NCBI GenBank assembly: GCA_038087875.1
Contig: CM075977.1
Location: 187,984,001-188,048,000 of the forward strand
Direction: 5' to 3'
DNA: 64,000 nucleotides
DNA from: Malacoraja senta
Lineage: Eukaryota
A program made the position numbers and the translations under genes. Under the pieces are notes generated by a model. The model made no database searches and was not told where the DNA came from. It was given only the letters and a program-made list of their open reading frames with translations. Shown in pieces: positions 35,164 to 41,107 of this stretch (the stretch's first letter is position 1; the number at the start of each line of letters is the position of its first letter).

Positions 35164-35210
35164 TCTATCTATCTTCTATCTATTCTATTCTATTCTATTT
35201 TATTCTATTT
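35164..35210 (+). repeat. (CTATT/TCTA)n microsatellite, continuing at 40021-40066 after the DIRS insertion
   Basis: Read directly on both flanks of the element. Confidence 0.9.
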
Positions 35211-35639
35211 TACTTCGGAGTCACGTGAATGACTACGTGAAGAACCCCGTCAGGGCGCATGCGCGTCATTACGTCGGACGCATTGGTGCGAACAGCAGCA
35301 GGAGCACAGACGTCCTGCTGCAACGTGAGTAAATACAGCTCCACAAAAGTCGGGGAGACTTTGGAGGAGTTAGAGAAAAGTAAAGATATTGTTTCTGTGT
35401 GTTTTCCCCCCACATACAGGAACAAGGAAAAGGTGCAGGCTGCTGCCGACAAGGAGAGAGAGAGCTGCGGGAGAGCAGTCTCTGAAAGGCAGCCTGTCAC
35501 CTCGGGGGAGTCGCAAGCCGGTAGCGGTGCGGCGACAGACTTGGCAAAGTGCTCAGCCGGGTACACAGCCAACGCCAGTCGGGCGGTCGGCATAAGTTAA
35601 GTCAGTAAGGGCTATAGACTCCGCAGAGTCGGGCCACGA

Positions 35640-36700
35640 GAGTCCCGTCGGGGACAGGATACCGTTCCCCAGCGGTTATCCAAAAGGAGCAGCTCATACA
35701 GGGGCTGCTCCACAGAGACGCTCCAGGAGGAGTTGTGTGGGCGGGAAGTCATAGGTAAGGCTCCGCTGGCAGTGCCTAGGAGAGGTCTGCCTCATAAAGC
35801 CACAACTCCAGGAGGAGTAGTGCAGGCGGGAAGCCTTAGGGAAGGCTCCGCTGGCAGTGCCTAGGAGAGGCCTGCTTCATAAAGCCATACTCCAGGAGGA
35901 GTTGTGCAGGCGGGAGGCCGTGGGGACGGCTCTGCTGGCAGTGCCTAGTAGAGGCCTGCTTGAAAGCACCCTCTTTGCAAGAGGTGAGTGCAGAAGGGCA
36001 GATACGCTCTGACCCTGAGTCCGACGACTTCCAAAGGGAGGGCAGGCAGCTGTCAGAGCTGACACCGTGTGCAGCACGGTTTGCCATGTCGTCGGATGCT
36101 GGTGAGCCTCTGGGTGAGGAACTTGCCACCAGCATAAATTACCAAGTCTCACATCAGCTACAGGAGCTGACAATGGATGAGACAGTAACGAAGTATGAAG
36201 CCCCAATCAACTGTGGACTGTTAAAAGTTCCTGTTGGGAACAGGAAGAATTGGGGTAAGATGGGCATACTAATGAAAGCCCAGGAGCATGTGAAGCTCCA
36301 GCATATTTTTAAAGTTGCTGGCATCTGGTATAACGAGCTTTGCCAGGATGGTGGATGGAGAGGGCATGACAAATTACAACAAAAGGCGCTATTGTGGAGT
36401 GCCCACTTTGAGATCAATTGCCTCCGCAAGATGCGATTAGACCAACCATCAATGCTAAATATGCTTCACTCTGCCAGCCTGGCACAGTGCAACTGGCACA
36501 GCTGTTTGGCGAGGATTTCGCACAGCAGGTGAAGGAGCTGGAGGAGGAGGCTAAGACGGCAGCCACATATTCACCAAAGCGGAAGTATCCCTATAAGGGA
36601 GCAGACTGGTCCGGGCAAGGGACGAGTCCAGCTACGATGCAGCGCAGTTGGCGTTCGGCTGTAGCACCGCCACGGAGGTGAGATATCCAGCTCAAGGCCG
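35640..36700 (+). pseudogene. DIRS gag-like ORF1 remnant
   Basis: Fragmented frames (KYEAPINCGLLKVP..; AIRPTINAKYASLC..LFGEDFAQQVKEL) upstream of the RT. Confidence 0.6.
35721..35961 (+). repeat. ~85-bp tandem repeat, three units, inside DIRS ORF1
   Basis: CTCCAGGAGGAG units start at 35721, 35806 and 35890. Confidence 0.9.
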
Positions 36701-38100
36701 GGGAAGAATGCCAGGTGGTAAGGAGTTAAGAGGGTCTGGTTCTCATGTAGACAGATCTAATGTGATACAATTAAATGTTTACCTCAGATATGTTTATACT
36801 GAAGGTTATTCAAGGGCATCGAATAAAGCTTAATGCAAATTCTGATTTACCCATGCAACATGTTCCAAAAAAGGAGTTGACTTCAGTATCACTGAACAAT
36901 TGGAAGTTCAGCTGGAACTTGCAAGCTTATGTAATAAAGGTGTAATTGCTAAGGCAGTTTACCAAAGCCATCAGTTTGTGTCCAATATCTTTCCCAGACC
37001 AAAAAAGGATGGGGGGATGCAGAATTATACAGACCTGAATAGTCTTAACCCTTTTGTACGGTATAGACATTTTAAGATGGAAACGTTTGGGAAGGAGATC
37101 TTAAAGATGCGGATTCAGTGTCTGTTCATTTGCAGGATAGAAGATTTAAAATTCAGCTGGATGGGGCAATTATGCCAATACAATCCACTGCCTAATGGTT
37201 TCTCTTCAGCTCCTAGAGGGACTACAAAGTTGTTAAAACCTATTCTAGGCATGATGAGAAGTCAAGGTCATGTGTTCATGGTTTAACTAGATAATATCTT
37301 GATTGTAGGACAATCAAAGGAAACAGCTGAAGCATCAGTGGCAGTTGGTAAAACCATTTTTTAATTGGGCTTTATAAGCTATCCAGAGAAATCTAAATTT
37401 ATACCTGTGACACAATTTGACTAGTTGGGTTCACAATGGACTTAATCAACATCATTGTGACCTTGCCCAGGCAAAAAAGGGTAGAGCAAATTAAGAGCTA
37501 TATCAAGTTAATTGCTAACACACAGCCTTCAATTAGCCAGGTGACAAGTCTGCTGTGGTAATGGCTGGCAGCATTTTGAGCAGTTCAATATGGCCACTTT
37601 ATTATCTACAATTACAAAGGTCAAAGGAACAAGCATTGAGGATACATTGGGGTCATTATAATAGACCTATGCTTCTATCAATAGAGGCTGTTGCTGATGT
37701 ACAATGGTGGATTCAGCATGTGTCCACTAGTAGTTCCAAAGTGTTATTGGACCAAGCTTCCATGATTTGCAGACAGATGTCAGAGCACTTGGGTAGGGTG
37801 CTACTGATACAAGATCCAGCGGTGGAGACAGATGAACATTGCTTCTGCAAACATGGGGAATTAACCAAGAGTATTTTATGGACTCAAGGCTTATGGCACT
37901 AACTAAACTAGTTTGCATGTGCAGTGCAAAATAGACAACACTACAGCAGTTGCTGATATGAATCACATGGGTGGAATCAAATTGTTATCATGTGACAGGT
38001 TGGCAAATACAATTGGACCTGGAGTAGAGATAGAGAGATTTGGATTGGAGGTATCTATCTGCCAGGGAAACTTAATGTAGTACCAGATGGCAGCTCATGA
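36700..38100 (+). pseudogene. DIRS reverse transcriptase / RNase H remnant
   Basis: FVSNIFPRPKKDGG, LNPFVRYRHFKME, LPNGFSSAPR; YLDD decayed to *LDN at 37284; RNase H motifs TD, IDNTTAVA and YLPGKLN. Confidence 0.9.
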
Positions 38101-38114
38101 AAATTCCATCATAA

Positions 38115-38493
38115 CACAGAGTGGATGTGGAACCAGGATGTGTTCAAGAACATAGTACTTCTATATGGAAGGCCAAAATATGTTTCATAGGCACCAGATC
38201 CAGGGGCAGTGACAATTGATGCTATTTCACTAAATTGGGATGATATGTTTGTGTACATTTTCCCACCATTCTGCCTCATAGGTCGGTGTTTGAGAAAATC
38301 AAGCAGGATGCCGCTTCAGGGGTTTTGGTGATACCAAATTGCCTGATTCAACCATGGATTCCTTTGATGTTACAGATAGCAATCCAACCTCTTTTTTGCT
38401 GATTCCAAACAGTAGGAATTTGCTGGAGCATCCAGTAACGCATTAAGTTCATCCGTTATGTGATGGTATGGATCTTTTAATTTGCAGGTTTTA
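38115..38493 (+). pseudogene. DIRS N6-adenine methyltransferase-like domain remnant
   Basis: TEWMWNQDVF..PDPGAVTIDAISLNWDDMFVYIFPPFCLIGRCL (YxFPP motif at 38254-38268). Confidence 0.8.
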
Positions 38494-38496
38494 AGA

Positions 38497-39474
38497 ATGC
38501 CTTACATTGGTCGAGGACTTTCTAGGCCAACGGTGGATATACTCACTGCAGCCTGGAGAAAGAGTACTCAAAAGCAGTATATGACTTATGTAAAAAATGG
38601 GAACAATATGGTGTTCAAAAGAATATTCAATATGATACTGTAGTTATTGCAAATGTGTTAGAGTTTATCTACACTTTATTATGATGAAGGTCTTAGCTAT
38701 ACTGCTATCAATACAGCTAGAAGTGCTTTGTCCGCATATCTTGTAATAGGTACACGGACACAAAGTATAGGTTCTCACCCTCTCATATCTAGGTTGATGA
38801 AAGGAATCTAATTCCAAACTGCCTAAGCCTAGGTATATGGTAATCTGCGAGGTAAGCGTTGTTCGTAACATACTTCGTGATTAGGTCCCTGTCATGGCTA
38901 TAACTTTGTTAAAATTAACCATGAAATTGGCTATGCTAATGGCATTGGTGTCATTGCCATTACAGAGAGTGCAGACTTTCCAAAAAACTTCAGTTCGAGA
39001 GAATGGAAGTGAATACAGAGAATGTTCTGTTTTATATTTCTGACCTGCTCAAACAAAGCGGGCCAGGTGTGACAGGTTTTAAGATTGTGTTCTCAGCATA
39101 TCCTACAGCTCCATGTTTATGTGTAAGGACACATTTGTTACATTACATTGAAGCCACAAGGGCTTTAAGACAAGAAGAAACAGGATTATTTGTCAGTTAC
39201 AAAAAGCCAACATAAAAGAGTGGCAGTTCAGACTATCTCAAGGTGGTTAAAGCAAGAGTTGGTTCAGGCAGGAATTAACATTTATGTGTTTACATCTCAT
39301 TCCACTAGCGCAGTAGCAACATCCGCGGCCAGGGCGATGGACGTTCCCATCGACCATATATTAAAAGCCGCAGGTTGGAAAAATGAACTTGTGTTTCAGC
39401 AATACTACCATCGGCCGATTGCCGATGGAGGGCTGTTTGCTAACTCAATATTGAGTGCTGTTGCTATTGTTTAA
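38497..39474 (+). pseudogene. DIRS tyrosine recombinase remnant
   Basis: RGLS..AAWRKSTQKQY, QRVQT, QTISRWLK, HSTS (canonical HSTR altered), ILKAAGW..VFQQYYHR; frameshifted. Confidence 0.92.
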
Positions 39475-39684
39475 AGTCTGTTTTCAATACTGTTTTCATT
39501 CTGTTTCGTTTGTTGCCCTACATCAAGAGGGTTTATTGGTTGTTTTATGACCAAAAATAAAACTGTTTTGTTTTTGCATGATATGCAATGTCATGTTTAC
39601 AGCATTATTGATGCTACTCAGAGTCAATCGATGCAGTGAGAAGCCGGGATTTTGATCTGCGGCATAAAAATCAGAGCTTTAAAA

Positions 39685-39796
39685 TCTTCACGTAGTCACT
39701 CACGTGACTCCGAAGTAAAATAGTAAGATTAAACGAGAACTTACCAGTTTGAAGTTTGATCTTTATTTTATGAGGAGTTACGTTGGTGATTACGTG
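39685..39796. repeat. DIRS internal complementary region (ICR)
   Basis: The 5' half is the reverse complement of the left terminus (1 mismatch) and the 3' half is the reverse complement of the right terminus (no mismatch seen); they overlap at AATAG (39719-39723). Confidence 0.95.
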
Positions 39797-40074
39797 CCCG
39801 CCACGCCCAACCCTCTCTCATAGAAAAAAGGTCATAATGGTAGTTCTCATGTTGATCATCTTAATATGTTACTTCAATTATGGTGTTGTCTGTGATTTCA
39901 TACCGCTGCTTTGAAGATTGACGCGCATGCGCCCTGACGGGGTTCTTCACGTAATCACCAACGTAACTCCTCATAAAATAAAGATCAAACTTCAAACTGG
40001 TAAGTTCTCGTTTAATCTTACTATTCTATTCTATTTTATTCTATCTATTCTATTCTACCTATCTATACCGTGTG

Positions 40075-41107
40075 CGGACGGGACGTCAAAGGACGAGAAG
40101 CCGAAGCCAAGAAGTGGAAGCCAGGATACCAAACGGACATGACGCCGAAAGGACACGAAACCGAATGGACACGACGCTGAAAGGATACAAAACCGAATGG
40201 AAACCACGCCGCAAAGACAAGACGCAGAACGGACATGATGTCGAAAAGCCGCCGAATGGACATGACGTCTCCGGGGACGGGATTTGTCCGAGACCTTGTC
40301 AGCGATTGGTCCAGATTCGTCCATCACTTCACTGGCCAGGGGGAGACGGGAGGGTGGTGGGGGGGGGGGGAGCTTGAGCTTGCGTTTGTAAAATGGTGGC
40401 AGTGACTCCAAGCTGCTACAATTGCCACAGAGGCAGTGATGTGATGGACGTCGCGGGGGTCTGGATCAATCGCTGACCTTTATCGATGACTGAAAAGGTG
40501 TCGGAACAATCCCATCCCCGGAGACGTACAAGGTACAACAATTTAACCATTTCAAAATGTAACAAGGTACAACAATTCTTGCAGCCAATCTAGATTTTTT
40601 AAAGTGTTTCATACCTATTTATCATTTTGGCTTCATGTGCGTTCGGCGTCAGATTGTTTTTCGGCTTAAAATGTGATGGGGAATGAACATGACGTCGAAC
40701 AGCATCAGTGGCAATCGCAGCAGTTTGGAGTCACTGCCCCATTTTACAAACGCAAGCTCAAGCTCCACCCCACCCTCCCGCCTCCCCCCCGGCCAATGAT
40801 GTGATGGACGCGGGGGGTCTGGAACAATCGCTGACCTTTGTCGATGACTGACAAGGTGTCGGACCAATCCCGTCTCCGGAGACGTCATGTCCGTTCGGTG
40901 GCGTTTCGACAACATGTCCGTTCTGCGTTTTGTCTTTGCGACATGGTGTCCGTTCGGATTCGTATCCTTTCTGCGCGATGCACTTTTGGCTTCTTGTCCT
41001 TTCGGCATGATGTACTTTCGATATTTTGGCTTTTCGGCATGATGTACTTTCAGTATCTTGGCTTCCACTTCTTGGCTTCGGCTTCTCGTCCTTCAACTTC
41101 CCGTCTG
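40075..41107. mobile_element. Foldback-type TIR element (MuDR/Foldback-like) with 16-bp subterminal repeats
   Basis: Inverted arms at 40075-40428 and 40708-41107; tandem units resembling GGACAYGACGCCGAAW. Confidence 0.8.

What the first reader, a model, noticed from the sequence alone, without database searches (positions are those of the whole stretch)
35205..40025. DIRS1 element with dead ORFs but near-pristine cis-replication sequences: a recently trans-mobilised non-autonomous YR retrotransposon
Seen: every coding domain carries stops, frameshifts or deletions (YLDD to *LDN, HSTR to HSTS, part of the MT domain lost). Yet the ICR matches the left terminus with 1 mismatch over ~39 bp and the right terminus with none over ~78 bp, and the CpG-rich 35-bp ITR pair is perfect. 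Established: in the DIRS1 replication model the termini are re-templated through the ICR each cycle, so their divergence dates the insertion. Inference: the coding lesions predate this insertion, so a defective full-length lineage is being propagated by an active helper DIRS in this genome.
Basis: partly seen in the sequence, partly recalled or inferred. Interest (0 to 1): 0.8.

Follow-up and report, generated by a model that had tools for sequence, protein, structure and literature searches.

The report
Coding-dead DIRS retrotransposon copied by helpers
This 4.8-kb stretch is one of roughly a thousand scattered copies of a tyrosine-recombinase (DIRS1-like) retrotransposon whose genes were already dead when the copies were made. 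Its end sequences are identical to those of a rare, still-coding relative in the same genome, so other elements' proteins must have copied it.

Summary
Window 35207-40025 is a complete DIRS1-like element with a 35-bp perfect ITR core. Its internal complementary region (ICR) pairs with the left end (1 mismatch in 37) and with the right end (0 in 78). ATT flanks both sides, and every reading frame is broken.

- **Shared lesions:** almost all lesions occur in 20-23 of 23 other dispersed full-length copies. These include the stop at the YLDD tyrosine, D>N, HSTR>HSTS, deletions of 41, 40 and 42 bp, and about 30 frameshifts.
- **Genome-wide counts:** the RT deletion junction occurs 764 times and the *LDN motif 1,333 times.
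- **Candidate helper:** a low-copy sister family (6-7 copies) includes a copy with open gag-RT-RH-MT (1,055 aa) and YR (332 aa) frames. The two families differ by about 7% fixed substitutions inside. They have none in the first 97 bp and one in the last 440 bp.

- This copy is not especially pristine. Its end blocks have decayed like its interior (0.56% against 0.77%).
- It belongs to an older, basal subfamily.
- Present-day activity is not shown, because no RNA runs were found.

Non-autonomous DIRS elements are known (TOC1), so this is a new member of a known kind. Two other first-reader notes of this scan flagged the same idea on other DNA of this genome.

The parts
35174..35209 (.). Left half of a (TTCTA)n microsatellite that the element split. 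It contains the target ATT.
   Evidence: 7.4 units; the right half is at 40021-40057 (7.6 units)
35207..35209 (+). Left flanking/terminal ATT trinucleotide (crossover core)
   Evidence: ATT precedes TTACTTCGG in all 24 family copies. It appears once in the ICR as AAT.
35207..35268 (+). Left inverted terminal repeat. The outer 37 nt (35207-35243) are complementary to the ICR. 35234-35268 is the perfect 35-bp ITR core.
35207..35303 (+). 5' conserved cis block: no fixed substitution between the dead family and the coding-competent sister family
35721..35971 (+). Three tandem copies of an 84-85-bp unit inside the former gag N-terminus. The sister family has one copy.
35426..36700 (+). gag-like remnant, broken by a stop at 35593 and many 1-bp frameshifts. 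Its longest frame (190 aa, 35960-36532) is open in 22 of 24 copies.
36780..38490 (+). RT-RNase H-methyltransferase remnant. It has deletions of 41 bp (36778), 40 bp (37095) and 42 bp (38171). The former YLDD now reads stop-L-D-N at 37284-37295.
38482..39474 (+). Tyrosine recombinase remnant. Frameshifts lie at 38663, 38806, 38982 and 39209. The HxxR arginine is replaced (AGC at 39307-39309).
   Evidence: (weak PF00589 hit on the last 94 aa)
39586..40025 (+). 3' conserved cis block: one fixed substitution (39882) against the sister family in 440 bp
39685..39796 (+). Internal complementary region. 39685-39721 pairs with the left end and 39719-39796 with the right end. The circle-junction AAT is at 39719-39721.
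39919..40025 (+). Right inverted terminal repeat (39919-39989) plus right extension. 39948-40025 is complementary to the ICR, and the terminal ATT is at 40023-40025.

Best explanation
The window holds one insertion of a non-autonomous, full-length DIRS1-like retrotransposon family (called N here).

Inferred origin: the ancestor of N lost reverse transcriptase first, through a stop at the YLDD tyrosine. The lineage then lost every other frame step by step, yet it kept being transcribed, reverse-transcribed, circularised through its ICR, and inserted at ATT sites. The proteins came from coding-competent relatives that share its terminal and ICR sequences (family A and perhaps others).

Shown:
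- The lesions are inherited, not acquired in place.
- The copies are dispersed, with precise ATT-bounded ends.
- The first 97 bp and last 440 bp carry no fixed substitution and one, respectively, between N and A, while the interior differs by about 7% plus many indels.
- After insertion, these blocks decay like the rest of the element.

Inferred:
- The conserved blocks are the cis signals that the helper proteins need.
- All four protein functions (Gag, RT/RNase H, MT if required, YR) were supplied in trans.
- Family A or a close relative was the helper.
For: Structure and membership
- ITRs, ICR and ATT flanks are present.
- Sister copy L045 carries RVT_1 (83 bits) and Phage_integrase (36.8 bits). 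A Dam-like domain scores 29.1 bits in L044.

Inherited lesions
- 8 of 11 gag-pol stops are shared by 21-23 of 23 copies, as are nearly all indels, including the 41-, 40- and 42-bp deletions.
- In all 24 copies the YLDD tyrosine codon is a stop and HSTR reads HSTS.
- None of 150 scored RT matches has an open frame above 229 aa.

Amplification
- The RT deletion junction occurs 764 times and *LDN 1,333 times. The undeleted A-type segment has 6 exact matches and the A-type YLDD motif has 7.
- Flanks are unrelated.

Repeated cycles
- There are 150 parsimony-informative sites and a ladder-like tree.
- Subfamily-shared indels exist.
- Intermediates carry the stop but not the deletion.

Helper
- L045 has open frames of 1,055 and 332 aa.

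Cis constraint
- Fixed differences are 0 in the left ITR, the ICR and the right ITR.
- The two conserved blocks together hold 1 fixed substitution in 537 bp against about 7% inside. The Poisson P is about 2e-15.
- N lost 37 conserved pol residues, against 2 lost by A.

ICR clock
- There are 28 ICR/terminus mismatches in 24 copies, about 1% per pair, roughly twice the singleton rate.

Literature
- The ICR is essential and RT acts in trans in Dictyostelium (PMC7192593).
- ATT termini are typical of DIRS1-like elements (PMC3266345).
Against: - There is no direct sign of mobility: no RNA run, no empty-site allele, no circle junction.
- The helper is not pinned down. The same ICR junction occurs 12,512 times, and several other DIRS families have open frames.
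- Divergence from A is uneven: fixed N/A differences, indel columns included, are 16% of alignment columns in pol, 4.3% in YR and 2.8% in the 3'UTR. Recombination or template switching with a coding lineage may therefore have renewed the 3' end, rather than selection alone.
- One shared ICR variant (39737 in L008 and L012) is not mirrored at the terminus. Re-templating may cover only the outermost bases.
- In Dictyostelium, a truncated DIRS-1 did not complete a cycle in trans (PMC7192593).
Confidence: 0.85

Rival explanations
1. Re-armed fossil. An old, long-dead copy regained fresh termini and ICR in one event: template switching during reverse transcription of co-packaged RNAs, or ectopic recombination with an active element. 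It then amplified in a short burst. On this reading, the identity of the end blocks to family A reflects recent descent, not long-term selection on a parasitic lineage. Mobilisation is still in trans.
For: - Divergence from A falls stepwise towards the 3' end: fixed N/A differences, indel columns included, are 16% of columns in pol, 4.3% in YR, 2.8% in the 3'UTR and 0 in the ICR.
- In the Cappello model the left end is rebuilt from the right ITR and the ICR (PMC7192593). One switch near the 3' end would therefore renew both ends.
Against: - Graded intermediates each have many copies: stop-LDD without deletion, then *LDN (1,333), then *LDN plus the 40-bp deletion (764).
- The tree is ladder-like with 150 informative sites.
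- The 3'UTR and YR still carry fixed differences while the adjacent 440 bp carry one.
Confidence: 0.1
2. The copies were autonomous when they inserted and decayed independently afterwards. Alternatively, their similarity comes from segmental duplication, gene conversion or assembly collapse rather than transposition.
For: - One pair (L019/L022) has identical flanks and 0.17% divergence. It is an assembly or segmental duplicate.
Against: - Identical stops, frameshifts and deletions occur in copies with unrelated flanks on many chromosomes.
- Ends are precise and ATT-bounded in 24 of 24 copies.
- Private changes are only 0.2-0.85% per copy, while there are more than 40 shared lesions.
Confidence: 0.02
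3. DNA-level mobilisation. The tyrosine recombinase of a helper excises and reinserts N as a DNA circle, Crypton-like, without an RNA step.
For: - The ATT-to-ATT structure fits site-specific recombination.
- One inherited ICR/terminus mismatch (L008/L012) is what DNA copying would give.
Against: - Cut-and-paste does not by itself raise copy number to about 1,000.
- ICR/terminus mismatches are otherwise private, at the rate expected if ends were perfect at insertion.
- The ICR is conserved as strongly as the termini. That only makes sense if the ICR is used, which in the tested system means the cDNA route (PMC7192593).
Confidence: 0.03

Closest known systems
DIRS1-like retrotransposons (order DIRS: DIRS-1 of Dictyostelium, DrDIRS1, XtDIRS, and the 42 families reported in Anolis carolinensis; PMC3266345)
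   Same: - Inverted terminal repeats.
- An ICR complementary to both outer ends.
- No target-site duplication, and ATT at both ends matching the 3-bp circle junction.
- gag, RT-RNase H-methyltransferase and an overlapping tyrosine recombinase frame in the coding-competent sister copies.
   Different: The window copy and its whole family have no intact frame. The family is 100-200 times more numerous than its closest coding-competent sister family.
TOC1 of Chlamydomonas reinhardtii, described as a non-autonomous DIRS retrotransposon (PMC9940879, citing Day et al. 1988)
   Same: It is a DIRS-order element without its own protein machinery, and it varies in copy number. It is therefore taken to be mobilised by relatives.
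   Different: N is a vertebrate-type DIRS1-like element that keeps full length (4.8 kb against 4.8 kb for its partner), with decayed frames rather than lost ones. Here the partner and the conserved cis blocks are identified by sequence. I did not compare the sequences with TOC1.
Non-autonomous LTR-retrotransposon families mobilised in trans (LARD, TRIM, BARE2, Dasheng with RIRE2; from my own knowledge, not checked here) and the Ty1 helper-donor system (cited in PMC7192593)
   Same: The ends and primer or packaging signals are kept under selection while the interior is free to decay. The parasite outnumbers the autonomous partner.
   Different: Integration is by tyrosine recombinase through a circle junction, and the ends are regenerated via an ICR rather than by LTR strand transfers.

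Membership tests
DIRS1-like retrotransposon | Inverted terminal repeats | tested here: met
   The arms are 71 nt at 80% identity, with a perfect 35-bp core.
DIRS1-like retrotransposon | Internal complementary region that pairs with both outer termini, adjacent to each other | tested here: met
   39685-39796 pairs with 35207-35243 (1 mismatch) and with 39948-40025 (0 mismatches). The same holds in all 28 copies, with 0-3 mismatches.
DIRS1-like retrotransposon | No target-site duplication; the element begins and ends with the trinucleotide of the circle junction (NTT, mostly ATT) | tested here: met
   ATT is present at the left end in 24 of 24 copies and at the right end in 23 of 24. AAT appears once in the ICR. 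The literature rule is in PMC3266345.
DIRS1-like retrotransposon | RT/RNase H plus a Dam-like methyltransferase domain | tested here: met
   In the window copy only remnants remain, seen by tblastn to DIRS pol proteins. Pfam on the pieces gave nothing. Sister copies do score: RVT_1 at 83 bits, Dam at 29.1 bits in L044 and 19.3 bits in L045.
DIRS1-like retrotransposon | Tyrosine recombinase instead of a DDE integrase | tested here: met
   The last 94 aa of the window remnant hit PF00589 weakly (E 0.002). The sister YR frame scores 36.8 bits against a cut-off of 27.1.
Non-autonomous element mobilised in trans | No copy of the family can encode the proteins; lesions are shared and so predate insertion | tested here: met
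   Shared lesions are shown. All 150 of 150 scored RT matches have frames of 229 aa or less. Only the best 150 of 17,479 candidates were scored.
Non-autonomous element mobilised in trans | Many dispersed copies with the insertion signature of the autonomous kind | tested here: met
   Diagnostic junctions occur 764 and 1,333 times. Flanks are unrelated and ends are ATT-bounded.
Non-autonomous element mobilised in trans | A coding-competent partner with matching cis sequences in the same genome | tested here: met
   L045 has open frames of 1,055 and 332 aa. There are 0 fixed differences in the ITRs and the ICR.
Non-autonomous element mobilised in trans | Direct evidence of mobilisation (transcripts, cDNA, polymorphic or new insertions, helper-dependent transposition) | not testable with these tools
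   No RNA runs were found. Only low-coverage contigs were available, and they cannot show empty sites across a microsatellite.

The most novel reading that the evidence does not exclude
N is a long-lived parasite lineage that reached full dependence in steps.

- Reverse transcriptase was lost first. Copies with the YLDD stop but no 40-bp deletion still carry an open 332-aa recombinase frame.
- The remaining frames were lost later, and the lineage amplified at each stage.

If so, it is natural proof that every DIRS protein can act in trans, and that the first ~97 bp and last ~440 bp are the only sequence the machinery needs. It also hints that the recombinase was kept longer than RT, for example through a preference for acting in cis.
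Probability: 0.3. Interest if true: 0.6.

Novelty: new member of a known kind. Interest (0 to 1): 0.42.

Why it matters
The DIRS replication cycle is known mostly from one model and from experiments in Dictyostelium. There, trans action was shown only for reverse transcriptase, and a truncated element failed to complete a cycle.

A vertebrate family of about 1,000 dead full-length copies gives a natural map of the cis-acting parts of a DIRS1-like element. Its ends are identical to those of a handful of coding copies. It also argues that the whole cycle can be driven in trans.

For annotation, it matters that most 'full-length' DIRS copies of this clade cannot be autonomous. Counts of 'potentially active' elements based on intact termini would therefore be misleading. 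Beyond transposon biology the finding is ordinary.

Tried and rejected
- Pfam on the stop-free pieces of the window copy gave only one weak integrase hit. The pieces are too short.
- A protein search with the RT piece returned only the dead family itself among the 150 scored matches, so it could not find a helper. A search with the Dam-like Pfam family found one.
- Distant DIRS pol proteins (30-47% identity) were too far to map single lesions. They served only as outgroups.
- The sequencing-run search found no RNA run. Laying contigs of four runs gave no usable joints for empty sites or circle junctions. The 'joints' near 39685 and 39941 are explained by the ITR/ICR self-similarity.
- Summed contig depths are not copy numbers, so I used pattern counts instead.
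Their status rests on pattern and protein-search tables only.
- I considered selection on the 190-aa gag-derived frame, which is open in 22 of 24 copies. At this low divergence that is expected by chance, so I dropped it.
- I built no consensus and repaired no frame.
Full report
**What is in the window**

The stretch 35207-40025 is a complete DIRS1-like element.
- It has inverted terminal repeats of 71 nt at 80% identity, with a perfect 35-bp CpG-rich core (35234-35268 against 39919-39953).
- Its internal complementary region (ICR, 39685-39796) has a left part that pairs with the left end (35207-35243, one mismatch). Its right part pairs with the right end (39948-40025, no mismatch). The two parts share AAT at 39719-39721.
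- ATT lies at both borders, and the element splits a (TTCTA)n microsatellite.
- This matches the published rule that DIRS1-like elements begin and end with NTT, mostly ATT, complementary to the 3-bp circle junction, and make no target duplication (PMC3266345).
- All three forward frames are full of stops.

**The family**

A DNA search of the window's own assembly (1.94 Gb) returned at least 24 full-length copies at 97-98% identity, on many chromosomes and with unrelated flanks. Only 31 of 4,648 candidates were scored.
- Mean pairwise divergence is 1.86%.
- Private (singleton) changes per copy are 0.06-0.85%. The window copy has 0.77%.
- One pair (L019/L022) is a duplicate locus.
- All 24 copies have ATT on the left and 23 have it on the right. 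The target favours ATT followed by CT.
- Four of the 24 sit at the same ATT of an older short interspersed repeat.

**A coding-competent relative**

A search of the genome with the Dam-like Pfam family, which marks DIRS1 pol, gave one match. It led to a sister family, called A here.
- Family A is 86% identical to the window element over its whole length and has the same length.
- Of four A copies read, one (L045) has an open 1,055-aa gag-RT-RNase H-methyltransferase frame and an overlapping open 332-aa recombinase frame. The others have one to a few breaks.
- Pfam finds RVT_1 (83 bits) and Phage_integrase (36.8 bits) in L045. The Dam-like domain scores 29.1 bits in L044.
- A census with the two proteins found a second A copy without stops and several more distant DIRS families with open frames. 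About 30 of 121 scored matches have an open recombinase frame.
- I describe these copies only as evidence that helpers exist.

**Are the lesions inherited?**

I walked the L045 frames along a pairwise alignment with the window copy. Against gag-pol, the window copy has:
- 11 in-frame stops;
- about 30 frameshifting indels;
- deletions of 41, 40 and 42 bp;
- a 167-bp gain of two extra 84-bp repeat units.

Against the recombinase frame it has five frameshifts.

Nearly all of these are shared by 20-23 of the 23 other copies. A few are private or subfamily-specific: the stops at 37577, 38098 and 38882, the 6-bp insertion at 38952, and 1-2-bp indels at 36871, 38392 and 38591.

- The YLDD tyrosine codon is a stop in all 24 copies. 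It is TAG in 20 and TAA in 4, including the window copy.
- The second aspartate reads N in nearly all copies.
- HSTR reads HSTS in all copies, and the 42-bp methyltransferase deletion is in all.

None of the 150 scored RT matches of this family has an open frame above 229 aa.

**Copy numbers**

Counts come from exact-pattern searches whose reversed-pattern controls all gave zero matches. Each pattern matched all sampled copies of the family it is meant to mark, bar one family A copy for the left-ITR 33-mer.

| Pattern | Matches in the genome |
|---|---|
| N-specific junction of the 40-bp RT deletion | 764 |
| stop-L-D-N motif | 1,333 |
| Undeleted RT segment, exact | 6 |
| Undeleted RT segment, up to 3 mismatches | 431 |
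| A-type YLDD motif, exact | 7 |

- Some copies with the stop-L-D-N motif still have the undeleted RT segment.
- A further set reads stop-L-D-D.
- Decay therefore went in steps, with amplification at each step.
- Within the sampled N copies there are 150 parsimony-informative sites, subfamily-shared indels and a ladder-like tree. The window copy lies in a basal subfamily.
- Daughters thus became sources repeatedly, after coding death.

**Which lineage decayed**

- At 251 pol positions conserved among 12 distant DIRS proteins, A and N differ at 45. A keeps the conserved residue 37 times and N keeps it twice.
- Codon-position differences between N and A are 93/80/151 in gag-pol and 15/20/31 in the recombinase. 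This fits one neutral branch plus one constrained branch.

**The cis sequences**

| Region | N-A divergence |
|---|---|
| 5'UTR, gag, pol | 11-17% |
| Recombinase | 7% |
| 3'UTR | 5.7% |
| Left ITR | 1.4% |
| ICR | 0.6% |
| Spacer | 2.7% |
| Right ITR | 3.2% |

- The values in the ITRs and the ICR are no higher than variation within either family; the spacer is somewhat above it (2.7% against 1.0-1.2%).
- Fixed substitutions number zero in 35207-35303 and one (39882) in 39586-40025, against about 7 per 100 bp elsewhere. The Poisson probability is about 2e-15.
- After insertion the same blocks decay like the interior. Family-wide singletons are 0.40% against 0.48% per bp (P 0.12). The window copy has 3 in 537 bp against 33 in 4,282 bp.
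- The constraint therefore acts on which copies reproduce, not on resident copies. The window copy's 'pristine' ends simply reflect its age.

**The ICR as a clock**

- Across 24 copies there are 28 ICR/terminus mismatches, about 1% per pair. That is roughly twice the singleton rate, as expected if the ends were perfectly complementary at insertion.
- This agrees with the Cappello model and with the experiment showing that the ICR is essential (PMC7192593).
- One exception: sister copies L008 and L012 share an ICR change (39737) that is not mirrored at 40007. Re-templating may therefore cover only the outermost bases.

**Activity**

- No run on record as RNA holds the sequence.
- Contigs from runs labelled as two other organisms carry N-type sequence across the deletion sites, at about 98.5-99% and 96-98% identity. 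The family is therefore shared with relatives.
- Present-day movement is not shown.
- DIRS insertions are known to be polymorphic in Anolis carolinensis (PMC7561263). I do not know whether this genome is an anole.

**Comparison with what is known**

- Non-autonomous DIRS elements are known: TOC1 of Chlamydomonas is described as one (PMC9940879).
- In Dictyostelium, RT acts in trans, but a truncated DIRS-1 did not complete a cycle (PMC7192593).
- I found no paper describing a vertebrate non-autonomous DIRS family. The library is not exhaustive, and curated repeat libraries may hold such entries.
- I file this as a new member of a known kind.

**Earlier notes of this scan**

Two first-reader notes on other DNA of the same genome propose the same idea. 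They are unchecked, and I did not examine their loci.

**Verdict**

Noticed in passing
window 39704-39737; genome-wide: The ICR circle-junction 34-mer occurs 12,512 times in the assembly at up to 1 mismatch. The left-ITR 33-mer occurs only 613 times and the family's internal markers 764-1,333 times. Contig depth also rises about fourfold from 39550 onward. About 10,000 further elements or fragments therefore share this junction, and I could not identify them.
   Followed up: partly
G000:C1:219806397-219811126 and G000:C1:62479310-62483731 (not fetched): These copies carry the stop at the YLDD tyrosine but not the 40-bp RT deletion, and they keep an open 332-aa recombinase frame. They look like RT-dead, recombinase-open intermediates.
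   Followed up: partly
L008 and L012, positions aligned to window 39737 and 40007: Two sister copies share an ICR change that is not mirrored in the paired terminal base, which lies 19 nt from the right end. This suggests that only the outermost bases are rebuilt from the ICR.
   Followed up: partly
window 35721-35971: The dead family has three tandem copies of an 84-85-bp unit where the coding-competent sister family has one. The gain lies in the former gag N-terminus or leader.
   Followed up: no
L004, L013, L016, L024 flanks: Four of 24 copies are inserted at the same ATT of an older short interspersed repeat. Their flanks are 72-86% alike over about 100-200 bp. This points to a sequence preference beyond ATT.
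   Followed up: partly
window 40072-41064: Another repeat lies directly beside the element. It has arrays of 16/32-bp units at 40128-40219 and, in inverted orientation, at 40930-41064, with inverted repeats between them (40265-40788).
   Followed up: no
G000:C1:356698142-356706026 and C1:384930246-384934534: These are clusters of partial copies of the family joined head to tail or with an inverted 3' end. They could be nested insertions or recombinase-made rearrangements.
   Followed up: no
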